DNA of 64,000 nucleotides from Bugula neritina (taxonomy: Eukaryota > Animalia > Bryozoa): the NCBI GenBank assembly GCA_964035545.1, contig OZ037769.1, positions 13,112,633-13,176,632 on the forward strand. Reading direction: 5' to 3'. The position numbers and the translations under genes are program-made. Shown here one piece after another: positions 2,789 through 38,500 of the stretch. The notes under the pieces were generated by a model. It saw nothing but the letters and a program-made list of their open reading frames with translations, was not told where the DNA came from and made no database searches. Within the stretch, counting starts at the first letter, position 1; every line of letters begins with the position of its first letter.

Positions 2789-2804
2789 GGCCCTGGAAAG
2801 GGCC
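2789..2804 (-). terminator. Histone 3' stem-loop of H2A (GGCCCT-TTCC-AGGGCC), followed by AAAGAG downstream element
   Basis: Reverse complement reads ccccaatGGCCCTTTCCAGGGCCacca...tcaaagagtg, ~25 nt after the H2A stop. Confidence 0.93.
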
Positions 2805-2828
2805 ATTGGGGTTGGGTAGTTTTAGTAT

Positions 2829-3206
2829 TTAGGCAGCAGCTTTCTTGGTCTTGCTGGGCAGCAGTACAGCCTGGATATTAGGCAACACACCACCCTGAGC
2901 TATGGTGACGCCTCCCAAGAGTCTGTTTAATTCTTCGTCATTCCTGATGGCTAGTTGCAAATGTCGGGGAATTATTCGTGTTTTCTTGTTGTCACGGGCA
3001 GCGTTTCCTGCCAACTCGAGTACCTCAGCAGCTAGATACTCCATTACAGCTGCCAGGTAAACTGGGGCACCAGCACCCACTCTTTCGGCATAGTTGCCTT
3101 TTCTGAGCAGACGGTGAATTCTTCCAACTGGAAACTGCAAGCCAGCCCTTGAAGACCTGGTCTTGCTCTTTCCCTTTGCTTTGCCTCCTTTTCCTCTTCC
3201 AGTCAT
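2829..3206 (-). CDS. H2A: Histone H2A, canonical replication-dependent type
   Basis: 125-aa intronless ORF with [40 protein letters not shown]; 3' stem-loop. N-terminus is TGRGK rather than SGRGK. Confidence 0.99.
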
Positions 3207-3490
3207 ATTTGACGCGATTAATTTTGTTGTGCAAACTTTGCGGTAGTCACGGCTGGACGCGCTTCATATTTATACACAATCATGGTAGTTAGAAACTGTC
3301 CAATCAAAGACATTTGTAATAAACGGACGTCTTGGTAAGATTTCTCTAACCAACGTCGTTCGACCTAGAACGAGCGTACACTTGTCCAATGAAATGTTTA
3401 GAACTACCTCATTTGCATAAAATTTGAAATATAAACACATGTATTCCTATAGCGCTCCATCCTACATTAGCGTTCTAGTTTGGAAGAGAC
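3207..3490. promoter_or_regulatory. Bidirectional H2A/H2B promoter
   Basis: CCAAT at 3386, octamer ATTTGCAT at 3411-3418, TATAAA at 3430 (H2B side); tttata (minus-strand TATAAA) near 3269 (H2A side); motif aaacggacgtcttggt at 3321-3336. Confidence 0.85.
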
Positions 3491-3859
3491 ATGCCTCCTA
3501 AAGTTAGCTCAAAAGGTGCCAAAAAGGCTGGCAAAGCCAAAGCTGCCCGCACTGGTGACAAGAAGAAAAAAAGAAAAAGAAAGGAAAGTTATGGGATATA
3601 CATCTATAAGGTCTTAAAGCAGGTTCATCCAGACACAGGTGTTTCATCAAAGGCGATGAGCATTATGAACAGCTTCGTTAACGATGTGTTTGAGAGAATT
3701 GCTGGCGAAGCATCAAGACTGGCTCATTATAACAAGAGATCGACAATAACTAGCCGTGAAGTACAAACGGCGGTGAGATTGATTCTCCCCGGAGAACTTG
3801 CCAAGCACGCAGTATCTGAGGGAACTAAAGCTGTCACGAAATATACCAGCTCAAAATAA
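3491..3859 (+). CDS. H2B: Histone H2B, canonical
   Basis: 122-aa intronless ORF with [26 protein letters not shown]...[16 protein letters not shown]; 3' stem-loop. Confidence 0.99.
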
Positions 3860-3885
3860 ACTACACTGTAAAACTAAACCCCAAC

Positions 3886-3901
3886 GGCCCTTTTCAGGGC
3901 C
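3886..3901 (+). terminator. Histone 3' stem-loop of H2B with AAGAGTT downstream element
   Basis: ccaacGGCCCTTTTCAGGGCCacca, then aagagtt 13 nt later. Confidence 0.96.
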
Positions 3902-4738
3902 ACCAAATTGTATCAAGAGTTGTTCTTTTACTACGTTTAAATGCATTGAATAGAATAACTATTTAATTAATCATTTTTACCTTGCCTATAGCTATGTTAA
4001 CCTGTGTGCAATGTAAATAAAACACCTGCCAACTGATAGAGCAGCACATTGCAGACTCAAGTTGCCTTTATACCTTCACGATTTTCAGCAGAGGTATAAA
4101 CGCAACTTAGGAGTTGCCTGATCATTTGTTCAGTAATAATTTTGCAGTTAGTTATGGGGTATGACGCTATCACAACCTAGATAACATAAAAGGTTGAGAG
4201 TTGAGTAGAGAGCCAGTACAGCATTTCCAGCCCTATAACCTAGTGGGTGCGCAAACGATATCTTTACGAGAAATACAAAATCCCGTTAAATACAATGAAT
4301 GAATAATATAGTATTAACTTTAGACTCATTGGACATTGTATTGGTATATTTTATATTTATCTGTACAAGCTAGCAATTTACTTGCGTAAATAAGTGTGAG
4401 AAACATTATGGTTTTAATAAACTTTATTAGGTAAAGTAATCAACTGCTGTGTCATTATAATCATTAGCTGGAGTGTGCTCACTGCTACTTTGACTTGGTA
4501 TGTTCTACTTATTACATCATAATCAACTAGACTGCGAGCCTACTATAATCATACATTACATATTGGTTACTGCAATCAACACTGCACAGAGAAATTCAAT
4601 TCCAGCTTTAAAGCGAGACTTCATAATTATTAGAGGCTATATTTTTTAGATTTGCCTGCCTTTAATATATTATATATAAAAATGCAAAAAATAGTAGTAG
4701 GACGGATTAATGAACAATACACTTTGGGATGAATGGTT

Positions 4739-4754
4739 GGCCCTGAAAAGGGCC
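4739..4754 (-). terminator. Histone 3' stem-loop of H4
   Basis: Reverse complement cccaacGGCCCTTTTCAGGGCCaacca...aaagtg. Confidence 0.95.
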
Positions 4755-4779
4755 GTTGGGTCAAAATGGTGAGGGTAGT

Positions 4780-5764
<985 letters not shown>

Positions 5765-5792
5765 GTCTAAACTTCCAAACCCTAAACCCAAC

Positions 5793-5808
5793 GGCCCTTT
5801 TCAGGGCC
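5793..5808 (+). terminator. Histone 3' stem-loop of H3 with AAGAGTT downstream element
   Basis: cccaacGGCCCTTTTCAGGGCCacca...aagaagagtt. Confidence 0.96.
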
Positions 5809-8493
5809 ACCAATATTAAGAAGAGTTTGTTCATGTGCATCTTGTTATTATAGTTGCTAAATTTCAAGTGAAAAAGCTTATCTAATTTTTTGTAATTTAA
5901 TTTATTTACTTTATAAAATGCAACAAGTTCAACCTATAATGATACAATCTGCCAAAAGTTAGAGCAATACATTCCAGGTTATAAGAGTTGTCTCATCTTT
6001 GATCAGTAATTAAGCTGTTGTATAATATATGGCACCTGCTGGTGTTTGACTGCAGCATTTCCTGGTGTGTGACATCCTTGCTCATTTTTATATTCTACTA
6101 CTTCAACTTTCAATTGAAATATTTTATTGCTTTAGCAAGAGTTCTTTATTAAAGAAATGATAGCAGAGTGTTTAAAACTCTGTTATAAAACATTTAGGTT
6201 AGTAAGAATATAATTTATGTGTAAACTAGTAATATGCGAGAACTAACTTTTGCATGCAAAATGAACACTTTCCGTAAACAGAATATGTAGCTTATAAACG
6301 TGCTAACACTTGTGATATGTTATAGTGGGAGAAAAACACAAAATTATATTTAGCAAGGACAGGAGAGTTTGAAAAGTACAATCATGTTAAATGTGGTTGT
6401 AACTGATTGTGTGTTGCCCACTATAAATAACTATATTGACCCCATTGACTTCCTATTTATGTTTATGTTTAGGTGACATCGGGCAGCAGGCATTACTCAT
6501 CTGCCTTGTGCTGACTATTAGATTTGTGGTCAGGTCATTGTGGTTGGGGTGGCTGTCATTCTTGCCCTACCTCTACCGGGCTGGGTTGGTACCCTGAGGC
6601 TATACCCAGTGAATGTTTACTATGTTTTGGGACACTTAATAATTCTGGTATTTTTTAGGGACAATAGTTGTTCATACATGCAATATGTTTTTGCCTGGTA
6701 CAGTAACAACAACCAGAGTATATAAACACCTAACAAACTCAATACAATAAGTTGGCAGCACTCTTTAACAAAACTGTACTCGCTATTTTATTAATCTACT
6801 GGTTTGACAATATTATTTACTGGCACTGTCTATGAAGGACCTAAGAGGTTGGTTACTTTTATTCAGATTATTATCTGAATTATTATTTTATAATAAATTT
6901 ACTTTTATGGTTCTTGTGAGCATTACTTTAATATTTTTAACTACATTTATATGCATGCAATCATTTACATACCTTTTGCCTTTTCTTATTTAGTTGTTTC
7001 CAGTATAACCTTCAATAAACTTCTGCGTTTGGGAACCCTGGCGGTTTATTTATACGGGGCCAGTATAACAGTGGTCACATAATATTTATATAGTTGTTGG
7101 ACTTCACACTGTAGCCTGTGACATTAAGAGCATGTGTCTTCTGCAGTCTGCAGTTGTAATTGTCTCCTCTTCGCATTCTAAGAATATGCTGAACAGTCTT
7201 GTGTCCATCATAGTTGGTATCGGCATTCACCATTTTGTAGAATATGCTCCATGAAACAATGTCTATGTTTGATGGAAATGCAATGAGAAAGTTTTTAAAG
7301 ATTATATTCATCACTGGTCAAGTACATTGATTGGTGCAGAAGATGAAGCTAAAAAGTGGTAAGATAACTCCAATACATAATGCATGAGTTAACACTGCTC
7401 ACAGCAGCTGGTTGGTTGGCAATTAGGAAAGCCAACTGGTTGTCTTGAATACATGCCGAGTTCAGCTTTTCTTTCAGAGTTGTAACAAGAGTTGGTGGCA
7501 CTTCCAGTGTCTCTACAGTGTACAGTTTGTCAGTTGACCTGTAGACAGTGGGGAGATAATTACTCTTGTATATTAATTTCTAAGAGCAACTCATCAATTA
7601 AATTGTTGAAAGTTGTCAGTATAAATATACAAAATATTAAAATAATCTAATTTTATGCAATGTTTTCAATCACTGATGCTGTGGCTTAAATTATATTTCA
7701 AAGACATTATGAGGTATTTCAATACATTTTCCTTAAATATATTCTCTTTCAAAATCTAGCAAAAAAGTGCAATTTTCAGTATAATTATTATCTGGGACTC
7801 CCTAATCACTTATTTGCTAAAGTCAAGTCTGAGCTTACATCTGGCTGTAAGCAAATTATTTAACTTGAAAAATAGTTTGCATTTGAATTTATTAACTTCA
7901 AGAGCCAACAACTCCAAAATTCATGGCTAGCTGCTCTGGTTATATACGACTCTATTAACTTATTAAATTCTCTGTTCTATAGGCAATAATAGAATTTATT
8001 ATTAAGTAATAGATAGAAAATTATTTGGTATTTGCTTTTCAATTTGGCAAATCTGTGTTTTCATATTCTTTCTCAATTGGAACTATAGAAGATTTTAATA
8101 GAATGCATTAATTTTCTTTTGCACCACACAATAGATTATAATATAATAATTCACTAAAGAATGCTTGTGTTACAATAACAATAAACATAGATTTGCATAA
8201 CTCTTTTATGTTTTACTGTTAGCTATTTCTAATAAACACATTACATTTTGAGTTAGTGAAAGAGTGATTTATTAAAGTAATATGAGCAGCTAAAGCATTA
8301 ACAAAAAGCTGCTATTTAAAATAGTTGAACATAAAAGACCAAGAAAGTGATTAAATGACTTGAGTTTACGTAATGCTTACGATTGGCCAATGAAATGCTT
8401 CCAACTACCTAATTTGCGTATAAATTGTAATATAAACCCATGTGTAGCGTTTTTTTAAACTTCATTTCTACATGAAGACTCTGTGGTAAGAAA

Positions 8494-8826
8494 ATGGCTC
8501 CTAAAGTTATCTCTGAAAGCAACAAGAAAGGAAGAAGATACAGAAAGGAGAGCTATAATGCAATCTACATACACAAGATATTAAACCAAGTGCACCCAGA
8601 CACGGGTGTATCTAGCAGTGCCATGTGCATCATGGACAGCTTTATGAATGATATTTTCATAAGAATTGCTGGTGAAGCATCAAAACTCTCTCAGTACAGC
8701 AAGAAACCCACTATGACTAGCCGGGAAGTGCAAACAGCTGTGAGGCTAGTTCTCCCCGGAGAATTGATCAAACATGCTGTAACTGAGGGAAGGAGAGCTG
8801 TAAACAAATATACCAGCTCCAAGTAA
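8494..8826 (+). CDS. Divergent histone H2B variant (110 aa, short N-tail)
   Basis: Intact ORF with H2B fold motifs ([31 protein letters not shown]); upstream CCAAT/octamer-like/TATA block homologous to the H2B promoter; intact stem-loop. Confidence 0.9.
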
Positions 8827-8852
8827 ACTGCATGTAGAACAAAACCCCCAAC

Positions 8853-8868
8853 GGCCCTTTTCAGGGCC
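8853..8868 (+). terminator. Histone 3' stem-loop of the H2B variant with AAGAGTT downstream element
   Basis: cccaacGGCCCTTTTCAGGGCCatcaacctgttcaagagttgttct, homologous to the H2B 3' end. Confidence 0.95.
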
Positions 8869-21058: not shown

Positions 21059-24031
21059 GAATCTTAGTAACGCATACGCCATACCAGGCATACCTATTGG
21101 AAAGACCAGCGCTATATTCTAAAGTGCATATGATGAAAGTATTGTTGGGCTTACACTTGTTTTGGTTCTCAATACATTTAGGCAAAAATTGAAACATTAA
21201 AGCAACTGATCTCCCCACACACAATTTCACTTGATAGCCATTCTATAACTGCTTCTGCTGTCCATCATGCATGTAAAAACATGCAACTTTATTGATTACA
21301 CTAGAAAAGTTAGTATTCAATTGATAATTCTAATATACCTCACTTCCAGTACACCAGCCATTTCAGGATGTGCCCCCCCCCCCTTCATCCACAGAGAACA
21401 GAGTTCTGTAGCACATATTATACAGTGGGAGACATGTTTCTATACTAAAGCATATTTAGAAGGTGCACAAAGTCAAGCAAGAGCGCTACTAAAGCCTGCA
21501 CCCTCAAGTAATTCCAGGAGTTACAAGTTTTGCATCATGACAAGAGACCACCAACAGAGAGGCGCCATTTCTGAGAGCATTCTACTCAATCTGTGTGCAG
21601 CAGCTGTTTTTTTCGCAATGACTAATAACACAAACTGTTTGCTGAGATACTGTACAACGTACGTCTTATAAATTCTTTTGATAATGTGCTACTACACTTC
21701 TTCAGTACCATCAAGAAAACTCATTAGCTAGCAGCTTCAATTTCAGACAACTTCCATAAAGAATTCAACTTTTGTGAACTAATAAACTCTTTTATTTAGC
21801 TATAACAAGAAAAAGTGAGAGAGAGTCTTTGCTTAAAACTACATAAATTGAATAAAAATATAAAGCAGCAGTTAGAACTGCAGCAATAAAAACAATAAGG
21901 ACATTACCATTATATAACATTCCAATATTAATTTACCAGACATAATTAAGTAACATTCAAATAATATTTTTGCAGAAATCAGCATGCAAAGCAAATGAAC
22001 TCTCCCGAGCAGTTTCCAGAATGCATTGCATGGAGGTTTCCTGATGGCATTCTTCTTTCTGCACTCAAAACCTATGGCCAGGCTTGATATGAACGGACGT
22101 ATAGGCTTACACACGCCTCACTAGCTACTCTTTATAAAAGTTAGAAGCAAATCGTTTAGGTGCCAGTACCACCAGCACACCATACTTCTGTTATTTTGGG
22201 TGCTGATCTGAACGGACCATAGAAGAGGTGGCAATCGGATGATTTTGTGATATCAACATGCCACGGATGAGGCACAACTGACCATTAAAACCTAAATACA
22301 CAGTAGAATATTACAAAAATACTTACCAACAACAAATAACAAAATTTTCTACTTCTCCTGTATTCAAATTACTTAGATATCATGAATTTAAATTATTTAA
22401 CTAAATATTTACAATCTTTTTTCCTTTTAGCTTATTTTACCGCTGGCACAGTTGATGGTGGGACAGTAGTTAGTGATGAATGTCCGACAGCTCTCTGCTC
22501 TATCAACAATTATAATCATTATTTTTGCACATTGCAACTTGGATATCATTTAGTATTATTACCTTTAGACTTGAGGTGAGAAGAGCACACAAGAGCTTGA
22601 GTATCTGGCTGACAACACCATCTGATCTGTTCATAAAAGTACCATTGCCTCGGAGGGTCACGACCTTTAGGACGAAACCATAACTGATAACAGATGAAGA
22701 GCAGAAAATTATTAAGGAGAACTTCAGATAGCTGAAGTAAAGTCTGGCATTGAGCCACTACAGTCTACACTATCTGGTGTGAGCAACATCTGGTGGTAGG
22801 AGATGGTGGAAAACTGAGGGAGAAACTGAGAAACATGCATGACGATTCCCCGAGTATCCCTCGTTTCCTACTATTAGAGCAGTGATGTTTACTGTAGAGC
22901 TGTTGACAACCTGCAACAACCACGCAGTTATAGAATAGCAAATAAAAACAGAATAGTGAAGAAAATTTACAAACCTGAGATAACTCTGGGAAAAGAAATG
23001 AAAGTTCTTGCAAATGTCATTTGACAGTGCCCTAGTGCTGCTCCTGTGCAAACTTGTCAGCTATCATACAGTCAATGTTCTGAGCATACCTCTTCACTCT
23101 TCATAAAAGGTCATGTACTAGGCAGTTGCTTTTATTATGCCTACTAACAAGAATAATTCACTACAAATGAAAAATTTATGAAGGAAATAGTTTAGGAACG
23201 CACAAACCATGCAGCATAAGAGGTTTACTGTGCTCAACAGTAAGACGCTATAAGTAATCATGTACTCACTTGTTTGATTACCAAACCCAACAGAGAGTAG
23301 TAGCTGGTTCGCTTAGAATGACAAACTGTTGGGAGTAGTCAAGTCAACACCCGGCTCAGTGCTGCGATAGAATGTTTGGTATGTGCCATGGTAGGAGACA
23401 TTATGTTGTAGAATGTAGGTCTTGACAACAGGGTCACATCCAGGAAGTTTAATGTTATGCGCTTCAGCAAAGTTGAAAAGAAAAACAAAATGATATTTTA
23501 GTTTATTGGAAGTTAATAAATTAGGTATTCATATATTGAAAGGCCATTCTGGTATCAGATATTTGATGATTTATACTATACATCTTCAGACAAATTGCCT
23601 ACACGCTGACTTCGAATATATAGAATGTGTGACTAGAAACTTTTTTACAACTGGTTTGTTAACAAAAACAATAGAACCACAACTCATTAATGCTTGTAAC
23701 TAGTAGTCAACACCAGATCTAATTCCGTTACAGTCAATTGATAGCAATAAATTATGTGGCAAGCAAATCACTTAAGCAAGATATTGTCTCAGATAATAAC
23801 TCTGAAATACATCTTTTCGAAATACTTTACATAATGACTAAATTTGACAAAATGTGGCCAAAAGTCTTATGAAAGACTAATCAGCTTAAATGAATCATTA
23901 TTGTGGTAAATATTAGAGCTACCCTCCCTTGTATACACCACCCTAAAAACGCCAATCTAACAGTTATACTTAGCATTGCCCTTTCCCCTTTTTTAATTAT
24001 ATACTTGGTTGATACTGATTTTGTTTACTCA

Positions 24032-24324
24032 TGTGAACCGACAGTTGGACCGAGTTCGGCTCGTGGATGCAGGCAGACCGAATGTTGGGTACTGACATGA
24101 CCAGTGTCGGTTACTGACAAGACGAATGTCGGCATATCCGGCCGAACTTCGGCCCGCTGTCGGTCGAAGGTTTTGGAAGCCTTTTGTTCTGTTAGTGTAA
24201 AAGGAAGTGCATTTTCGAGCTTCAGTCACTTGAAGACTGGAGCTCGGACTGGAAGCATCAATACTACAATAAAGCATAGAGTACACACACGATTTCAACA
24301 CCCTCTCTTGTCTCTTCTATAACA
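24032..24324 (+). mobile_element. Probable solo LTR
   Basis: GC/CpG-rich island starting TGT and ending ACA, AATAAA at 24268; no TSD could be confirmed. Confidence 0.5.
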
Positions 24325-24885
24325 AGGAGTTATGTTCTCTGCCTGATTTCATTCAATAACCCACAAACTACTACAATATAGTGTATGACTTGAATGTTGA
24401 TCATTATAGGGAAACGCCACATTTCTGTTAACTCATGAGGCGTTAATAGACAAAGCAGACAACATCATAAGGAGAATTGCAAACAACACTGATAACTTGA
24501 TTTTTGCAAAAATATCATATATATTCAACACCATGGAGTGGGTGGAAAATGCACCTCCTTGCCGAGCAGATAAAACTGCAAGCTAAATTAAGAGGCAAGA
24601 AAATTAAAACTGAAGTTGTTAGCAGTGGGCAGTGCGGATGGAGGAGTCCGAGGAACCCCCCTATACTGAGGAGACTGGGTGTGGATGGTCAGCTACTGTA
24701 GGCGTCGCAGAGAGTCGGCTAAATTACTAAATTTACAAGCTTTTGTTTTACTTTTTAGATATTTAGAAGCTGACACTGTGAACAATATACAGTCTTTGCA
24801 CTGGAACATCAGGTTTGACTTTGCTCTGTGTCACTAATAATTTTAAAATTGCTTTCATCAATTAATTTTGCTTTCATTCTTCACC

Positions 24886-27498
24886 ATGTCTGCTAACCTG
24901 CTTAGCTCTTACACCTCTGATCTTGCTGCCTTGGCTGATTTGAGCTCTTCAAAAAATAGCCATGTTGTTTCTTTGGCTCGTGAACTTCCAAGAGGTAGCT
25001 CAACAAAAGCTGTAGATATTATTAAAAAGTTGTCCAATAAATTTGCTAGTAAGTTAACTGTTATTAAGCTTAATACAATTTTAAAAGATTATCAAGACTT
25101 GAATAAAAAATGTTCCACGTTCTTATGGACGTCAAGCAGTAATCGAATTTCTTAAATTGAATGTGGAGTATGCTAAATCAGGGCAGCACTCTTCCACCCT
25201 CCATTCACAAATATCATCATCCATGTTCGGTCCAAGGTTATGCGCAAACACAGCATGCTGTGTCTAAGTAGTTTAGTTAGAAAAATGTGAACCTTCTGGC
25301 TACCATACATGTCTTGAAAGAAAAGCTGGCAAATGCTCGCAAAAATATTAAAAATTTTAGGGGTAGGTGTTCTAGGCGCAGCAATAGTTTGAATAGGTCC
25401 CAAAAGCTTGTGAAGAAACTAAAAGCAGAGATAGCTAGTTTAAAAAAGCATGTAGTTGATTTGCAGCAAGCTCATTCTTCAACAGTAGCTCAAATTGAAA
25501 ATCTAAAAAAAAATGGGGACCTCAAAGCTCGGCTTGAGAAGTTTGAAATTGAGGTTGATGAGAAAAAGAAAAAATTGAATGCTCTTGGTCAATCTGTAGG
25601 AGTGAATGCCAGCACTATTGAAACTAAAGTTAGAGGAAGGTATTCTGAAAATGTTAGGAAGGCTGTGTATCATTGTGCACGCTGCCAGGTGCCACAGAAC
25701 CACATCTCGAGTGTCATCCGTAAAATATCTGAGCTTCTATTCAATAAGTCTATTTCACCTCTTCCTTCATATGGCACTGTCAACAACATGGTGTCAGAAA
25801 TGCGGTTTTTATCTAAAATCCATGCTATAGATTTTATACTTGAATCGTCATTTGTGAATATTGCTTGGGATGCTACTACATTCAAAACTAAGCACTTGAA
25901 TGAACTGCATGTTAATACAAGTTCTGGTAGCTATTTTTTTAGATGTAAAGACTTTGCCTGGTGGCAAAACCGAAGACTATTCCCAGCACATAATTTCTAC
26001 GATGGAGTGCGCTGTTGACTGCTATTGTAGGTTCAAATCGATTGCAAATAAGGGTGGTGTCTTGAGCATAGTAAAATTGAAAGTAACTTCCACGCTTAGT
26101 GATAGAGCTGCAGTTAACAATTGTGTGCATAGAGTTGGCAAATTAAATTTGAACTGCAATGTGCATCCCTTAGATAGCTTGTCATTGGAATTCAGAAAAG
26201 TTGTTGCACTAGCAGAAAAGCAGAATGGTATAGTTTTTAGATTGTATGGCTCAGAGTCTGTAATGCTAAAACTCGTTCTAAACACCCCTAAGTTGCGGCA
26301 CAAAGTAGCTCTGGGCGAATTTATCTGGTTTCGAACATTTTTGGAGAAAAAAGGAATGGATAAGCTGGTAATGCGTTATGTTGGTGACAGGTTTCACATC
26401 CTGTTTGCTCTCTGCGCTAACATCCATTTCCTTCTCGGCCATCTGCAACATTATTTCTCTATTGTATGCAAGAAGGATTTCCGTAGATACCCTGGCTGCA
26501 TTGAAACTAGATAAAGTTCAATCAGAGCTACTAGTCGGTGGACTGTTTAGTAAATGTTTGACAGGGCTTTGGATGACTTGCTTGCACAGGCGTAAAAGCT
26601 TATCGAACATTGAAAGTGGCCAAGTGTTGAATGGTGCTTATGCAAAATTGGGTGATTTTGTTCGTGACCCCAAGATGCTGTGGGCCGAAACTTTCAATTG
26701 TTTTGATATTGCTAATGGTGAAGACCCTGTTGCCAAACATATAAGATCAGTTCACCTAAACGAGTTTGCGCTTTAGCTTACAGTTCGAACAGCTCAATCA
26801 TTTCGGTTGGTGATGCATAGGCAGCTCAAGAGATATTTTGAAGGAGGGGAGTTGTATGAATTGCCTGCTGAGCAGCTAGTTTTGGCCAGCAATGCACCTG
26901 CTGACAATATGATCTCAGAATGCTTTCTTGGTTTGGCTGATAATTTTTATAGGAGGTCGGCCAATGCCTCCGATGCTCATATATCTGCTAAAATAGGATT
27001 TTCAAATATGACATCTGATTGGGTAATAACTTAGATAATGATTCCTTGTATGCTGCAATTGGCCCTGCTAGAGCTCTACTTGATGAATCTAAATTGAATG
27101 CTGTAAAAGTAAAAGATGAAATTTCTGAGAGGCTTAAAACTAGGGTGCAGGAACGTGCTAACAGCAAAAGGCTTTAAACATCAAGTCTTTAATGCGGGAC
27201 CCTTCCTCATTCGCTGAAAAAGTTGCTAGTGCATGCTTAGATATACCACCAGAAAGAGTTGATACAATCTTAGAAATTATCAAGTCTCCAGGTAATCTTG
27301 TTGGAACAGAGTTTGTTTGGATATGGAACAATGATGGTAGTGATACTTGTTATCATTACCGAGTTGTTGGCAGCGCGAGTGCCAGCTCTGGTGTGTCTAA
27401 GTTTTTAGCTGTTGACTGTTGATAGAGCAGAAGATCATGAGTTCTGTTTGCATGATTTCGTGACAGATTTTCTTGTAGGGGATGCGTTTTTTGAGTAG
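24886..27498 (+). pseudogene. Frameshifted DDE transposase of the CxxH-bearing (hAT/MULE/P/Kolobok/Dada-related) group, with N-terminal coiled coil
   Basis: Consecutive + ORF pieces (24886-25155, 25287-26018, 25900-26514, 26378-26776, 26807-27034, 27192-27498) give AWDATT (D1), LSDRAAVN (D2), CNVHPL (CxxH) and PADNMISE (candidate E); several frameshifts and stops. Superfamily not assigned; no TIR/TSD found. Confidence 0.75.
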
Positions 27499-27789
27499 CT
27501 TTTGCATTTTTTGAGTTGCTTTAGTATATTAGGTGTTTGTTGTTTTTGTTTTGGTCTATTAGGTGTAGTTAGCATCCTGTTCTTGCTTTCCCTTTCATGT
27601 TTGTAGGTCTCTCAATCACACCTATCACTAATCATAGTTAAAATTTATTGGATCATTCTCATCTTCGCATGTCTACTTTCATTTTTCACTTGTCTCTCAT
27701 ATCTATGAACTACTTTTAATATGTTTTAGAGCACAAATTAGAGAGCCGCCATGATGTGCTATTCACCACTCCTCGCCACCTTCTCCGGT

Positions 27790-27862
27790 CTACCACAATG
27801 GCCCTTTTCAGGGCCACTACCACAACGGCCCTTTTCAGAGCCACTACCATAAACAAAGAGTT
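27790..27862 (+). other. Orphan tandem pair of histone 3' stem-loops plus AAAGAGTT downstream element, with no histone ORF upstream
   Basis: 27-bp tandem unit: ctaccacaatGGCCCTTTTCAGGGCCa / ctaccacaacGGCCCTTTTCAGAGCCa, then ctaccataaacAAAGAGTT. The first stem is identical to those of H2B, H3 and H4 in this window. Confidence 0.9.
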
Positions 27863-28629
27863 CTTCTGGGAAGATTTTAGAAAATCATTCTTTTAACAAT
27901 ATAAAAATAAATAAATTATAACATCAAACTGATTTCTGAGCAATTTATTTAGGCAAGTATATCCGCTGCCTTTCCATAGCTTTAGTGTATTTTAAATTAT
28001 ACTTATAATTTGATCTTTTTATTACAAATATATAAGTACATGCTAAGCATATGTTCATAAATAAGCTAATAAATCATAAAGCTCTTGGTGTAGTACTCTG
28101 CCTTGCGATTTCTGCTACTGTGGAAAGCATGTGCAACTTTCGCGATTAATATCTAGTTTCCGCCCATCATGACTCGCTGTAACTGCAATGTCGGTGAAGG
28201 AGCACCCTCAGATTCTGACAATTGTCCACAGCTTTCTTGGGTGAATATCTTTTAAGGCAGAGCTTTGTGACTTTCAAGAATAGGCTTGTTTCTTCTGAAA
28301 TTTTTCTGGGATTCGTTTGTATCTAAAATCGATACATGAATTGGCATGTTGCAAGTCGTTTGATAACCCTATCAGTTGGAAACTGAAACGTCCCATGACG
28401 GTGAATGTCAGGTAGATTTAGGAGAGTCCCCAGTCCATGACTACCTGCTAGACCAGGAGATTGGACGGGTGGCTCTCCAACTATCACCCGACTTACCACT
28501 CTGTCAGAGGGTTCCTTACAAGGAGATGCCGAATTTTGGCATCGGTAGAATCGGCCAATCACGGCCTCTACTCTTTGTTTCAGAAGCCATGGAGTGTGAA
28601 AAGGTTGCACGTAAATGCAACACTCCTCC

Positions 28630-31998: not shown

Positions 31999-33778
31999 CA
32001 GACTCAACTAGTGAAGTAGTGAGCCTATGTTTCATATAGTTAGAATGCTTTAACCTCAATTTATTATGATACAATTTACATGTATATACTTTTATAATTT
32101 TGTAAGCTTTATTCTAACAAGGATGCTACGAAGAGGGATTGGGCCGACCTGGCAGCTCTTGTAAAAAGATAGGCTGAACAGCTTCAGACTATTCACAAAA
32201 CTAACAGAACCTACTTTGCAAAGGTTATTTGATTTAAATTTATACTCACTGCATTTGGAATGAGAACATTGAAACGATCTGAAATCTATGGAAATTAATT
32301 AATTTGAGCAGGAAAAGGAAATTAGGAAGGAGTCAAGAATAGAAAGAATTTTTTCTAAAAGGATAGGGAAAACTACGTGAGCTGGAGATATCAAATCACG
32401 ACGATGCAGATGATGATGTGTTGGATATACTTATGGCAAACTATATGTATTATGATCAATTCACGTCTGTAGCTCCCTCATGCGTTTTTTTATATGTTAA
32501 TATTTATACACTATGATTTTTGAACAGGGCGCCATAAGGCGCTTTAATCAGCCGTCTGGAGCTGGGGAGAGGAGCAAAACAAAAAAGTATCCCCATACTA
32601 TGAACAGATGCTCTTCATTTTGTCCACACTGAACGCTAGGAGCTTTCACGCCAACCTAATTGCTAAAGTAAGCAACAGTAGTGATTGTGTTAGTACGCAA
32701 ATTGATGTAACCATACACTATTTTTCAATTTATTTCACATAATCTGATTCTAAGATAAAAATCAGAATGCAGATTGCGAGGTTGGACATAGTCAAGGAGA
32801 ATCATCACAACCATCACGTGGTAGACAACGGAGACAGGGATGCGCCGAGTTACGGCTGTACTGTCAACGTTGGAACTCCCTGCGGATCGGGCCAGATGGT
32901 CTGCTGACCATGACTTTGGCCGCCAACAGCAGACAACCAGCGAGGGAGAGGATCGTCTGCCCAGCTGCCATCCGCCGGGAGTTAATACGGGACACCCACC
33001 AGCAAACTCACGCAGGAGTCCACGGGGTGGTCACCAAGCTACAACTCCGGTGGTACTGGCCCAACATGGAGCGGGACATCCGGCGCAGAGTGAGGCAGTG
33101 CGAAATCTGCCAGACCAACAAGCATAGCCGTCTCCCTGGTGAAGCGGGGCGGCAGACGCATTGTGCGAGAAGGTCTTGGCAAGCGGAGACTGTCGTTCTG
33201 GCCGGAAACACCCCCATGACTCCTCAGGAGGACTTGGCGAGGCAGGAAAGGCCACTTCCGTCCTTGGAAGTGCGCCCACCGCCCCCAACGTCAAGCCTGC
33301 CACCACCACTTCCGGAACCGGAAACGGGTCCGGAAGTACAAAAACCCCCCGTGGGAGGGGCTCCGTACGGAGATACCAACGTAGGAACAACCGTCACAAA
33401 CACGCTGGAAAAACCACCCGTGAGACATAACAATCCACGGGTGAGCACACCGCCTCCCACAGTGACGACGCCTCCAGGACCACACACTAGGCAACCCCCA
33501 GCGTGCCTCGGAGACTTCGTACGTGACCGCGTTACAAGCGGCAGTTATGAAAGTCTAGCGAGGTCTCGTATGGGAAAACAGGCAAAGAGACGTGGGAATT
33601 GTGAACACCACGAAAATCTCAACTTTTGCCTCGGCGGAATCACAAACGAGATTCATCCGCTGGAAGTAAAAAGCCCTAGTCACGCTTCACAACCACGCTG
33701 CCCGGTCTTTTTTTACGTTGATGCAGTCAAGAGTAGACGTGGCACTAAACATTAATCATTTACAGCTCTCATTCCAAA

Positions 33779-35526: not shown

Positions 35527-38500
35527 TAGTCTGGTGGCAACTGAGGTTTATCTTTCAAGTTCGTAAAAAATTTCATGTAGGTACTTTCTGAAACACTTTT
35601 TTGGTCAATTGAAATATGCTGAACATGAAAAAGATACTGTACCTTAACCTAGTTGTGGCTTTCACCCTTAATTTTTAGAATTAAAAGCCGAAATTCTTAA
35701 AGCAAAGTATTAGGAGTTATGCTCTCAATTTAAAAACATAGTCGAGGTTCTGATCCTTAGAAGAGAATATAAGCGGGACGCTAACATAGACCCCTTTAAT
35801 TTATTTTGATTACTTAGGCTAAATACAACTGTTCAAATATTCATCCATATTTTTCACTTCCTGTTTGTAAGCATGAACAGATTTTAGCTGATCATGGAAT
35901 GTGCTATTCATTACAAACAAATTGCAAATGAAACACTGCTGATATTGGAAGGAGAAAAGTTAGAAAAAACAAAAGCAATTGCCAACTCTTGGCTACCAAC
36001 TCTAAAACAGCCTGAGTGTGCTATTGCCAACAAGTTTTTGTCTGATGAACTAGGTCTAGATCCCTTTCAGCTGTACACACACGGAACTGGTCTCCTTAAG
36101 TTCTGGGATTGTAGCTGATAGCGAGTTTGCAGAACGGATGTTGGCAGCGCATCAGATAGGTTAAACAAAACTGCAAGAGTTTCTAGACAGACGTGTTTGC
36201 AAACAGGAAGAGGACTTTTTTGCCACCATCAAAAAAGCTAAATTGCAAACTTTTAATTCTTGCAAATCTAAAACTAGAAGTAAAAGTTCCACAACCAGCA
36301 ATATTACATCTCTGAAGTCAGACCGGTCTCTTTTCATCAAACTTGTTCTTGTAGCAAAAGAGCGTGACATCAACTTAAAAGAGATACTCCGCTATTCTCT
36401 TTCAGAAGTTCCGGGAAGTCTATCTAATGCAAATGGCACCGGACTCTGCAAGACTGTTAAATCGGTTTTGCTAAAATATCTCGAAGAAACGACTCCATCT
36501 TGCATAGCTAGTTGTAAACCATCATCTTCTGCCATTATGATAGACTTCATGGCACTAGTTCAAAGCTTTCCATTATCAAAACTACCATCCACATATGGTG
36601 AGCTTGCACTGGCTCTTCTAAACCGCATTTTGCAGATAGCCTCACAGTTCAGAGCTACCCGCGTAGATATAGTTGGGGATTGCTATCACAGAATAAGTAT
36701 TAAAGAAGGTGAGAGAACTAGACGGTGTCAGTCTGTGCAGGAAGTCAAGATCTATGGCAGTGATCAGCGTAGGCCATCTCAGTGGAAGAAGTTTTTAACA
36801 TCTGGAAAAAACAAGCAAGCTCTACAATGTTTTATCGCCGACCATCTTAAACTTGTAACTCATTCTACATCAGTCGCTCTCTATGTTGCGTTAACAACAG
36901 ATGTATTTAAGCTGTTGTTCAATCCCGATCAACTGCCACAGACTACCGATTGCCCAGAGATGCGGAGTGATCATGAGGAAGCAGATACAAGGTTGGTCTT
37001 ACATGCAAAAATAGCTAGTCAACATCATGAAAATGTAATAATATGGTCTCCAGACACTGATGTAGCTGTTATTGGCATTTCACATTGTAGTTCCATTCCA
37101 GCACAGGTTTTTTTTGCTACTGGTTCAGGGAAAAATCAAAGACTTGTGTGCCTCTCTGAAATTGCTGATCAGTTAGGAGATGAGAAGTCTAGAAATTTAC
37201 CGGCCCTACACGCATTCAGTGGGTGCGACACTACTTCCAGCTTTTATGAAAAGGGCAAAAAGTCAATTGCCATCACAGCACTGAGCGACCAGAATCATCT
37301 CAAAGCCTTATCAGGTTTCGGGCAACACTTTCAGTTGTCAGTTGTGCCAGAAGGCATTGAAAACCTAGTTTGCAAGATCTACAACAGTGCAGTAAGCTCG
37401 GTCAATGATGCTAGATACAAAATTTTTAGAACTGGTAGTGCGACAGACAGATCCTTGCCACCTAATTATGATGCACTCACTCTGCATTGTAAACGGGCAA
37501 ACTACCAGACTAAAGTGTGGCGCTCTGCTCTCATGCCCATCATGAACTGTCCAAGTCCTGATAATCAAGGATGGAAGATTGTGGATGAACAACTTGAGAT
37601 AGCATGGCTGAGTGAGCCTCATGCACCCAGTGACATCTTAAAAACAAGGAAATGTTCTTGCAAAAAGACCAACTGTAAAGGTGGAAAATGTTTGTGTGTA
37701 CAAGATAAATTGCGATGTACAGCACTGTGCAGTTGCCTTAATTGTGAGAACAAAATGGTTGAAAATCTTTCTTCTGATGAAGATTTGGATGATGATGACA
37801 ATCCAGATGAGTGTTTTTCAGCATGATTGTATTCCATGGAATTTATAAAGCATTTGACTTTTAAGGTTACAATTTTGTTCATGAATATTTCAGTAGTTTT
37901 AAGTGTCATTAACCTCATCTTTGCAGAATGCTACACCTAGCATGAAGTCATATTGATAGACTAAGTTCCTAACTTATTGGAAACTAGTGCATGGCTGCAA
38001 GTTAGCTGTCAATCTGTTTTAAATTTGAGTAATTTAGTCACTATTATATTTCTTGTATTTCATGCATCTAATCCGCTAACTACTCAGGAGGCACATTTTG
38101 TAGCCTTAGCTCATTTACCAAATTACTTCCTGTTGCCTTCATTTATATAGTTTAATCTTTTTAAATACATAGCTTATTACAATAAATACATATTATGTCT
38201 AATATTGTTACCAGCTCTATATCACTTCTTACTGGATAGTCGAACATATTGCATTATACTAGCATATTAAGCCTAAGTTCTCTATACTTGGAAAGTAGTT
38301 GGGGTAAAAGGATGAATACCCATCTTTGGGATAAATCGGTGACTAAATTGAGCTTCGTCTCACGTAATATAGATACCTTTTAGTGGTATTTGTACTGGTT
38401 GTATGAACAGTATAATAGAGCTTACGAAATGGGGAAAGTTAGATGGAAGTTATAGCCTGAGCTCAAATTGCTTTTTAACCCCCGAAAGTCACTGGTACGT

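What the first reader, a model, noticed from the sequence alone, without database searches (positions are those of the whole stretch)
24886..27915. DDE transposase gene ending in histone-mRNA 3' processing signals (tandem stem-loops + downstream element)
Seen: about 300 nt after the transposase stop (27498), on the same strand, lie two tandem histone stem-loops (27800-27815 perfect; 27827-27842 with one C-A mismatch). They have histone-like CAAY/ACYA flanks, and AAAGAGTT lies 12 nt after the second, the same motif and spacing as the true histone genes ~19 kb upstream. No histone ORF precedes them, and all five histone genes here keep their own stem-loops. Established: this signal (SLBP + U7 snRNP) is essentially exclusive to replication-dependent histone mRNAs and gives S-phase-restricted, non-polyadenylated transcripts; Dada transposons, a related CxxH group, target conserved multicopy RNA genes. 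Inference, three options: (a) a DNA transposon that co-opted histone 3'-end processing to tie transposase expression to S phase or oocytes; (b) an element that targets histone stem-loops, the 27-bp duplication being an end or target copy; (c) a chance remnant of a deleted histone (e.g. H1) gene.
Basis: partly seen in the sequence, partly recalled or inferred. Interest (0 to 1): 0.85.

Follow-up and report, generated by a model that had tools for sequence, protein, structure and literature searches.

The report
Transposase gene with histone-type 3′ end
A decayed jumping-gene copy in what an earlier scan note calls a bryozoan genome carries, inside its own tail, a complete copy of the signal that normally ends only histone mRNAs. 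This suggests, without RNA proof, that the element once ended its transposase message the histone way.

Summary
Two tandem histone stem-loops lie at 27800-27815 and 27827-27842, and a histone downstream element starts at 27855. They sit about 300 nt after the stop of a transposase-like ORF, on the same strand.

- The ORF is a pseudogene, with at least 8 frame-breaking indels and a premature stop.
- The protein has a Hermes/P-element-like fold with D, D, CxxH, E. It does not fit Dada.

The cassette lies inside a 3.29-kb unit (24737-28021). A second copy on contig C3 (93.7% identical) has the same tandem stem-loops. A much older, internally deleted copy on C4 has one decayed stem-loop. The window unit is flanked by TTAC/TTAC and the C3 unit by TTAA/TTAA, which looks like a 4-bp target-site duplication. 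No inverted terminal repeats were found.

C3 and C4 have no histone genes nearby. Of the 41 other stem-loops in the genome, 38 sit just 3' of histone genes. None of 80 relatives, nor the paralogue loci examined, has one. This excludes "targets histone stem-loops" and "local histone remnant".

Use of the cassette as the mRNA 3' end is plausible: orientation fits, no earlier poly(A) signal exists, and the stem-loop was preserved in the ORF-bearing lineage only. It has not been tested on RNA. All known copies are dead.

Earlier scan notes report histone-type stem-loops on two other non-histone genes in this genome.

The parts
24733..24736 (.). Left copy of the putative 4-bp target-site duplication (TTAC).
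   Evidence: TTAC lies immediately outside both ends of the shared unit in the window. The C3 copy has TTAA at both ends.
24737..28021 (+). Repeated 3.29-kb unit (AAGCTTTTG...GATCTTTTTA). It holds a 149-nt leader, the broken transposase ORF and a 523-nt trailer that contains the histone cassette.
   Evidence: A second copy lies at C3:6170542-6173849, 93.7% identical over 3229 aligned positions. No terminal inverted repeats were found.
24886..27498 (+). Pseudogene of a hAT/P/Kolobok-like CxxH DDE transposase family. Frame segments: 24886-25152, 25281-26015, 25900-26511, 26372-26773, 26777-27031, 27019-27174, 27162-27419 and 27409-27495.
   Evidence: Searches show the frame changes and a stop at 26774. 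Searches find intact paralogues of 800-917 aa, plus one of 1260 aa, at about 50% identity. Searches give the fold and the invariant D, D, CxxH, E.
27499..27789 (+). 3' trailer between the stop codon and the cassette. It holds no AATAAA or ATTAAA.
27790..27843 (+). Two 27-nt tandem units. Each is CTACCACAAY followed by a stem-loop and an A.
   Evidence: family D2, 93%. The same tandem is present in the C3 copy. The C4 copy has a single decayed unit.
27800..27815 (+). Histone stem-loop 1, perfect. It lies 39 nt upstream of the downstream element, which is too far to pair with it.
   Evidence: it folds in both the MFE and the centroid structure.
27827..27842 (+). Histone stem-loop 2, with one C-A mismatch here and perfect in the C3 copy. 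It is the one correctly spaced from the downstream element.
   Evidence: 30.9 bits.
27855..27867 (+). Histone downstream element (AAAGAGTTCTTCT). The C3 copy has AAAGAGTTGTTCT and the H2B genes have CAAGAGTTGTTCT.
27906..27915 (+). First poly(A)-signal hexamers (two overlapping AATAAA) after the stop. They lie downstream of the cassette.
   Evidence: The C3 copy has none within 700 nt of its stop.
28022..28025 (.). Right copy of the putative target-site duplication (TTAC).
28026..28100 (.). Right flank shared with the C4 copy but not with C3. This suggests an occupied site that was later duplicated segmentally.
2789..8868 (.). Histone cluster used for comparison: H2A, H2B, H4, H3 and a divergent H2B, each with its own stem-loop and downstream element.

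Best explanation
Shown. Window 24737-28021 is one copy of a small, now dead subfamily of a cut-and-paste-type transposase gene unit. The protein has a Hermes/P-like RNase-H fold with a CxxH motif, is intronless and is about 870 aa long. The unit was duplicated to at least two other places.

About 300 nt after the stop codon, on the sense strand, its trailer holds a complete histone pre-mRNA processing cassette. The cassette has the A/C-rich 5' flank, a 6-bp/4-nt stem-loop, AC.., a 13-nt spacer and the purine-rich downstream element. It has since been duplicated in tandem.

Inferred origin. The cassette was captured at the DNA level from a histone gene's 3' flank. It cannot come from a histone mRNA, because the downstream element lies beyond the cleavage site. 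The capture predates the split of the three copies.

Inferred function. While the gene was alive, SLBP bound the stem-loop next to the downstream element and U7 snRNP paired with that element. The transposase pre-mRNA was then cut a few nt after the stem-loop. This would give a non-polyadenylated message whose formation, and perhaps stability, was tied to S phase or to stored maternal RNA.

Today the copies in this assembly are pseudogenes and the cassette is drifting.
For: - The cassette is real and as good as true ones: 30.9 bits against 28.1-40, and spacing of 13 nt against 12-14 nt.
- It lies inside the unit. Window and C3 share 24737-28021, with the tandem stem-loops at the same place.
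- C4 has one decayed stem-loop plus AAAAGTTGTTCTGGG at the homologous place.
- The unit is flanked by TTAC/TTAC in the window and TTAA/TTAA on C3.
- It is not locus-bound. The genome-wide scan finds no other stem-loop on C3 or C4, and the nearest histone-fold hits on those contigs lie 13 Mb and 1.7 Mb away.
- There is no poly(A) hexamer between the stop and the cassette. The first one in the window is at +408 and C3 has none in 700 nt.
- Polarised against the species' canonical stem-loop, the ancestor of window and C3 keeps 16/16 positions. The ORF-less C4 derivative keeps 10/16. The flanks are 73-77% identical. That is 6 changes against 0, about p = 0.016 under equal rates.
- Most disabling lesions are private to one copy, so the ORF died late.
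- Fold: Hermes E 4.6e-7, P element 8e-5, hAT/DUF659 atlas clusters TM 0.6-0.69. D, D, CxxH and E are invariant or nearly so.
Against: - There is no RNA evidence. The only runs available were Logan contigs, which cannot show 3' ends, and the 'RNA?' runs behave like DNA.
- All members found are broken: window, C3, C4, and a 720-nt metagenome contig 93% identical to both. Nothing is under selection now.
- One frameshift near 25935 is shared by window and C3. The gene may therefore already have been dead when the unit last moved.
- No inverted terminal repeats were found. If the TTA belongs to the unit, the target-duplication evidence rests on one base per end, with a chance of about 0.08.
- The relative-rate test rests on 16 sites.
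- From my own knowledge: a stem-loop about 300 nt from the stop is at the limit reported for regulated histone mRNA decay, and processing is most efficient inside histone locus bodies.
- Another copy seen in other individuals appears to lack exactly the 45 nt holding both stem-loops.
Confidence: 0.5

Rival explanations
1. Neutral passenger. A roughly 55-nt piece of a histone 3' flank was picked up by the unit through transduplication or repair-mediated capture, perhaps while it sat near the histone cluster 19 kb away. It has simply been copied along and never served as the 3'-end signal of the transposase mRNA.
For: - All copies are pseudogenes and the cassette is drifting at about the neutral rate between window and C3: 3-4 changes in 81 nt.
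- The association is confined to this one subfamily. None of 80 metagenome relatives has a stem-loop, 16 of them with at least 400 nt after an intact ORF. None of the intact paralogue loci examined has one either.
- A copy in other individuals seems to have lost both stem-loops.
- The window copy lies near a histone cluster.
Against: - The cassette is complete, with both flanks, the stem-loop, correct spacing and the downstream element.
- It is on the sense strand and is the first 3'-end signal after the stop.
- The stem-loop stayed canonical in the ORF-bearing lineage while it decayed in the ORF-less derivative.
Confidence: 0.33
2. Not a mobile element. The family is a host gene family derived from a transposase, and the window, C3 and C4 copies arose by ordinary gene or segmental duplication. 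One subfamily used, or merely carried, a histone-type 3' end.
For: - Between divergent intact paralogues, homology is limited to the coding sequence and starts exactly at the stop codon.
- Several paralogues lie in large segmental duplications.
- No terminal inverted repeats were found at any copy.
- Window and C4 share flanking DNA.
- A multicopy block of a distant relative shows no target duplication.
Against: - The 4-mers match at both ends of the window unit (TTAC) and of the C3 unit (TTAA). The target is TTAA-like, as in Kolobok (PMC9587614).
- The unit is compact at 3.3 kb, and internally deleted derivatives exist.
- The family has a patchy distribution across sponges, molluscs, cnidarians and basidiomycetes.
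- One distant relative sits between inverted repeats of at least 350 nt.
Confidence: 0.1
3. The element inserts specifically into histone stem-loops or 3' ends, in the manner of Dada, and the stem-loops are target DNA.
For: The family belongs to the C/DxxH clade that includes the target-specific Dada elements. The window copy is 19 kb from a histone cluster.
Against: - The stem-loops lie 180 nt inside the shared unit and are followed by shared non-histone sequence.
- There is no histone coding sequence on either side.
- C3 and C4 have no histone genes nearby.
- The tandem 27-nt units are adjacent to each other and do not flank the unit.
Confidence: 0.03
4. Chance remnant of a histone gene, for example H1, that was deleted at this locus.
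For: The locus is close to a histone cluster. No other use of the cassette has been demonstrated.
Against: - The same cassette sits at the same position in copies on two other contigs.
- There is no histone coding remnant.
- The only H1 gene is on C2 and has its own stem-loop.
Confidence: 0.02

Closest known systems
3' ends of replication-dependent histone genes (Rfam RF00032 stem-loop plus U7-binding downstream element)
   Same: Same stem-loop sequence as this species' own histone genes. Same A/C-rich 5' flank and the same 12-14-nt spacing to an almost identical downstream element (AAAGAGTTGTTCT against CAAGAGTTGTTCT in H2B).
   Different: It follows a transposase-like ORF, not a histone ORF. 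It lies about 300 nt from the stop, against 25-40 nt in the true genes. It is duplicated in tandem. It sits outside histone clusters in 2 of 3 copies. Processing has not been shown.
Kolobok superfamily of DNA transposons (PMC9587614)
   Same: C/DxxH-type DDE transposase. TTAA-type 4-bp flanking duplication (TTAA on C3, TTAC in the window). The 5' end starts RR (AA). The host range includes molluscs, sponges, cnidarians, fungi and bryozoans.
   Different: No terminal inverted repeats were detected. The 3' end is ..TA, not YY. No THAP domain or other Pfam domain was found. No sequence comparison with curated Kolobok transposases was possible here.
hAT transposases (Hermes; PDB 6dwz, 2bw3, 4d1q)
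   Same: Best structural match. The fold is RNase-H with a large all-helical insertion domain, with CxxH after the second D and a late E.
   Different: Pfam finds no hAT dimerisation domain (PF05699) and no BED finger. There is no 8-bp duplication and there are no hAT-type ends.
Dada transposons (PMC3706591)
   Same: Same broad C/DxxH clade.
   Different: Dada has DxxH, introns, CCCC and CCHC zinc fingers, transposases of about 1400 aa (1402 aa in Dada-U6_DR), 6-7-bp duplications and insertion inside small RNA genes. None of these is seen here.
Capture of host gene fragments by DNA transposons (Pack-MULE-type transduplication; from my own knowledge)
   Same: A short piece of host genomic DNA is carried inside a DNA-transposon-like unit and copied with it.
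   Different: The captured piece here is a complete cis-acting RNA-processing signal, placed in sense orientation in the element's own 3' trailer. It is not a coding fragment.
Other non-histone genes with histone-type stem-loops noted by this scan in the same genome (s1-472111 PNRC; s1-441585 H2B/GON4L chimera)
   Same: A histone stem-loop, with or without the downstream element, attached to a non-histone coding sequence in the same species.
   Different: Those are host genes reported as intact and conserved. This one is a repeated, decayed transposase unit. I did not test those notes.

Membership tests
Histone 3' processing signal (RF00032 + downstream element) | 6-bp stem and 4-nt loop matching GGYYYUUYUNARRRCC | tested here: met
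   27800-27815 is exact and 27827-27842 has one mismatch. Both are exact or loop-variant in the C3 copy.
Histone 3' processing signal (RF00032 + downstream element) | A/C-rich 5' flank and AC(C)CA-like 3' flank | tested here: met
   The element has CCACAAC before the stem-loop and ACUACCA after it. True genes have CCCAAC before and ACCA after.
Histone 3' processing signal (RF00032 + downstream element) | Purine-rich downstream element at a fixed distance after the stem-loop | tested here: met
   It is 13 nt from stem-loop 2 to the AAGAG core, against 12-14 nt in the five true genes. The sequence is nearly identical to the H2B element.
Histone 3' processing signal (RF00032 + downstream element) | Reaches the Rfam gathering score (34 bits) | tested here: not met
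   It scores 30.9 bits. Two of the five genuine histone stem-loops here also miss the threshold, at 28.1 and 32.8 bits.
Histone 3' processing signal (RF00032 + downstream element) | Complementarity of the downstream element to this species' U7 snRNA | tested here: inconclusive
   The Rfam U7 search found nothing, and nothing in the control genomes either. A pattern search gave 3 hits against 1 control hit, and one plausible candidate could not be inspected.
Histone 3' processing signal (RF00032 + downstream element) | Actual SLBP/U7-dependent cleavage giving a non-polyadenylated RNA end | not testable with these tools
   Only assembled contigs of public runs were available.
hAT superfamily | RNase-H-fold DDE core with a helical insertion domain and CxxH | tested here: met
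   The model has pLDDT 82.5. Hermes is the top hit at E 4.6e-7.
hAT superfamily | hAT C-terminal dimerisation domain (PF05699) and BED finger | tested here: not met
   There is no Pfam hit on the pieces or on three intact paralogues.
hAT superfamily | 8-bp target-site duplication and short terminal inverted repeats | tested here: not met
   Only a 4-bp TTAN flank is seen and there are no inverted ends.
Kolobok superfamily | TTAA 4-bp target-site duplication | tested here: inconclusive
   C3 has TTAA/TTAA and the window has TTAC/TTAC. Only two full copies exist and no empty site is available. A distant relative's block shows no duplication.
Kolobok superfamily | Termini 5'-RR...YY-3' with terminal inverted repeats | tested here: not met
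   The ends are 5' AA and 3' ..TA, and no inverted repeat is present.
Kolobok superfamily | Sequence similarity to curated Kolobok transposases | not testable with these tools
   No Repbase or Kolobok profile was on hand. Pfam has none that matches.
Dada superfamily | DxxH motif, CCCC and CCHC zinc fingers, intron-containing gene for a long transposase (1402 aa in Dada-U6_DR) | tested here: not met
   This family has CxxH and single-exon ORFs of 800-917 aa. I did not look for the zinc fingers specifically.
Dada superfamily | Insertion at a fixed site inside a multicopy RNA gene, with a 6-7-bp duplication | tested here: not met
   The flanks are neither histone nor RNA genes.

The most novel reading that the evidence does not exclude
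A DNA transposon lineage acquired the complete histone pre-mRNA processing cassette and used it instead of polyadenylation. Its transposase was then made only when the SLBP/U7 machinery is active, in S phase or in eggs and early embryos. This would be a previously undescribed way for a mobile element to time its own expression. Together with the scan's notes on PNRC and H2B/GON4L, it would mark this bryozoan lineage as one in which histone-type 3' ends have spread to several non-histone genes.
Probability: 0.35. Interest if true: 0.8.

Novelty: new variant of a known kind. Interest (0 to 1): 0.55.

Why it matters
Histone-type 3' ends are regarded as almost exclusive to replication-dependent histone mRNAs. 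In the literature held here I found no report of a transposon or transposase gene carrying this signal.

If the cassette worked, three things would follow:
- The signal would be shown to be portable to an unrelated, long mRNA (about 2.6 kb of coding sequence) in nature.
- A mobile element could couple itself to DNA replication or to maternal RNA storage.
- The 80-nt cassette would be a natural module for testing what is sufficient for U7-dependent processing away from histone loci.

Even under the neutral reading, this is a clean, datable example of DNA-level capture of a cis-regulatory RNA signal by a mobile or duplicating unit.

Tried and rejected
- **Pfam.** Scans of the ORF pieces and of three intact paralogues gave only coiled-coil noise.
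- **PDB by sequence profile.** Only coiled-coil hits.
- **Close relatives of the stem-loop-bearing subfamily.**
  - phmmer against 1.8 billion representatives gave a best full-length hit of 51% identity.
  - The first metagenome scan, with a window piece, found nothing.
  - A 75-aa fragment at 90% identity led to a 720-nt contig that does not reach the 3' end and is also broken.
- **Stem-loops near relatives.** None in 289 kb of 80 metagenome loci by regular expression. None in the intact paralogue loci examined, by regular expression or by the Rfam model at E up to 10.
- **Terminal inverted repeats.** None around the unit or within 12 kb.
- **Histone promoter similarity in the 5' leader.** None.
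- **Extended similarity of the cassette region to any histone flank in the genome.** None.
- **U7 snRNA.** Not found by Rfam. The pattern result is no better than the control.
- **RNA evidence.** The one read-laying run returned assembled contigs only. The 'RNA?' run X4 tracks its DNA sibling X7 across genes and repeats alike, so it says nothing about expression.
- **Fetching the 13 singleton stem-loop loci.** I compared coordinates instead and did not try to read flanks by other means.
- **Broken ORF.** It was never joined or read through. Its pieces were searched separately and no repaired or consensus sequence was built.
Full report
**1. The observation**

The window holds seven matches to the histone stem-loop pattern, against none in 100 shuffles. 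Five follow the H2A, H2B, H4, H3 and H2B-like ORFs at 2.8-8.9 kb. The other two are the reported ones:
- 27800-27815, a perfect match;
- 27827-27842, with one C-A mismatch.

They are the cores of a 27-nt tandem repeat, 27790-27816 and 27817-27843. AAAGAGTT starts at 27855. The distance from stem-loop 2 to the AAGAG core is 13 nt, and it is 12-14 nt in the five true genes.

On the Rfam Histone3 model, stem-loop 2 with its downstream part scores 30.9 bits. This is inside the 28.1-40 range of the true ones, two of which also miss the 34-bit threshold.

Similarity to histone genes is confined to about 55 nt. There is no histone coding remnant and no extended match to any histone flank in the genome.

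In the window copy only stem-loop 1 folds stably. In the C3 copy the stem-loop next to the downstream element is perfect.

**2. The gene**

The ORF 24886-27498 is broken into at least eight frame segments. I searched the pieces separately and never joined them.

Pfam finds nothing. The genome holds intact single-exon paralogues of 800-917 aa, and one of 1260 aa, at about 50% identity.

An alignment of these with database homologues shows:
- an invariant D (in DATT);
- an invariant D (in SDRAAVN);
- an invariant C and H (CNxHPLD);
- a nearly invariant late E.

The AlphaFold model of the core has pLDDT 82.5. It is an RNase-H fold with a large helical insertion domain. Foldseek places Hermes first (E 4.6e-7) and the P element transposase next. 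In the ESM Atlas it matches unnamed clusters from sponges, molluscs and basidiomycetes at TM 0.85, and DUF659/hAT/FAM200 clusters at 0.6-0.69.

So "DDE transposase with CxxH" is right. The family does not fit Dada as described in PMC3706591.

**3. Copies**

A DNA search of the whole assembly and alignments give three copies.

- **Contig C3** (6170542-6173849). It is 93.7% identical over 3229 aligned positions and is also broken. It has the same tandem stem-loops: one with a TTTT loop and one perfect. Its downstream element, AAAGAGTTGTTCT, is even closer to the H2B consensus.
- **Contig C4** (20735760-20737249). This is an internally deleted copy, 66-77% identical. At the homologous place it has a single decayed stem-loop (10 of 16 positions) followed by AAAAGTTGTTCTGGG.
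- **The window copy.**

The cassette therefore predates all three copies. The 27-nt duplication arose in the common ancestor of the window and C3 copies.

The shared unit is AAGCTTTTG...GATCTTTTTA. It is flanked by TTAC on both sides in the window and by TTAA on both sides on C3. This is the pattern of a 4-bp target-site duplication at a TTAA-like site, as in Kolobok (PMC9587614).

Two cautions apply. No inverted terminal repeats exist. If the shared TTA belongs to the unit, the evidence shrinks to one matching base per copy, with a chance of about 0.08.

Window and C4 share DNA beyond the right flank. These two copies therefore look like one occupied site that was later duplicated segmentally.

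Public runs of other individuals hold further copies, including a derivative that skips 24792-27727. By record arithmetic it also lacks the 45 nt that hold both stem-loops.

**4. Tests of the three options**

Genome-wide there are 45 stem-loops of this type. Four belong to the two element copies. Of the other 41, 38 lie just 3' of a histone-fold ORF or of the single H1 gene.

C3 and C4 have no other stem-loop, and their nearest histone-fold hits are 13 Mb and 1.7 Mb away. This rules out targeting of histone loci (option b) and a local histone remnant (option c).

Stem-loops are absent from the paralogue loci examined. They are also absent from 80 metagenome relatives. Sixteen of these have an intact ORF of at least 500 aa and at least 400 nt of downstream sequence. 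The association is therefore specific to this subfamily. It is not a family trait.

**5. Did it work?**

For use as the mRNA 3' end:
- It is in sense orientation.
- The architecture is complete.
- It is the first recognisable 3'-end signal after the stop. There is no AATAAA or ATTAAA before it, the first in the window is at +408, and C3 has none within 700 nt.
- A polarised comparison points to constraint. Against the canonical stem-loop of this species, the lineage that kept the ORF shows 0 changes in 16 positions up to the window/C3 ancestor. The ORF-less C4 derivative shows 6. The flanking trailer is 73-77% identical. Under equal neutral rates, 6 against 0 has p of about 0.016.
- Most disabling lesions are private to one copy.

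Against:
- No RNA data are usable.
- Every copy found is dead, including a third lineage in an ENA metagenome.
- One frameshift near 25935 is shared by window and C3.
- The stem-loop is about 300 nt from the stop.

I put the functional reading at about one half and the neutral-passenger reading at about one third.

**6. Novelty**

Full-text searches found no report of a transposon with a histone stem-loop.

Two earlier notes of this scan describe histone-type stem-loops on other non-histone genes in the same genome, which one of them calls a bryozoan: PNRC (s1-472111) and an H2B/GON4L chimera (s1-441585). I did not test them. They make a lineage-wide spread of this signal a lead worth following. 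They do not count as support for this finding.

Noticed in passing
window 8494-8868: A fifth histone gene. It is a divergent H2B-like ORF of 110 aa with a shortened, altered N-terminal tail, and it has its own perfect stem-loop and downstream element.
   Followed up: partly
window 28369-28500 and onward: Start of a high-copy repeat, with at least 15 copies at 78-89% identity on many contigs. Contigs from public runs break at this point.
   Followed up: partly
window 24300-24727: Very high-copy repeat, with depth in the thousands in public runs. It ends 5 nt before the putative left target-site duplication of the unit.
   Followed up: no
window 22582-23488: About 66% similar, in inverted orientation, to C4:20729957-20731142. 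That stretch lies right beside a second small deletion derivative of the transposase unit (L015 5177-5772). What this sequence is remains unexplained.
   Followed up: partly
window 32910-33755: ORF with an integrase zinc-binding domain (PF17921). It is probably an LTR-retrotransposon remnant.
   Followed up: no
window 36243-37826: A 527-aa ORF with a weak Tesmin/TSO1 CXC domain hit.
   Followed up: no
L042 6197-9976 (-) = G000:C9 about 10751196-10754975: This paralogue is 1260 aa long because of an N-terminal array of QPQLSRQSLQS-like repeats. It sits head-to-head with a second paralogue (L043), and the two share a 96.6% identical 1.8-kb stretch.
   Followed up: no
L072 2749-3094 and 10478-10833: A distant metagenomic relative (about 30% identity) lies between inverted repeats of at least 350 nt, 7.4 kb apart. 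The right arm is cut by the contig end. This is the only sign of long inverted ends in the family.
   Followed up: no
G000:C4:1450155-1450178: AACTCTTGAGTCAAATTTTTCTAG. It combines the complement of the CAAGAGTT downstream element with an Sm-like site, so it is a possible U7 snRNA gene. It was not inspected, and the pattern search was no better than its control.
   Followed up: no
G000:C9:2342541, C9:4472813, C2:3225912: Three canonical stem-loops with no histone-fold hit listed beside them. They could belong to H4 genes, which PF00125 does not cover, or to further non-histone genes.
   Followed up: no
window 24791/27728 and 27799/27845 (joints in public runs): All four runs hold a copy with the transposase part deleted (TC at the joint). 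It apparently also lacks the 45 nt holding both stem-loops. In the two putative RNA runs of the species it is 4-10 times deeper than the ORF pieces.
   Followed up: partly
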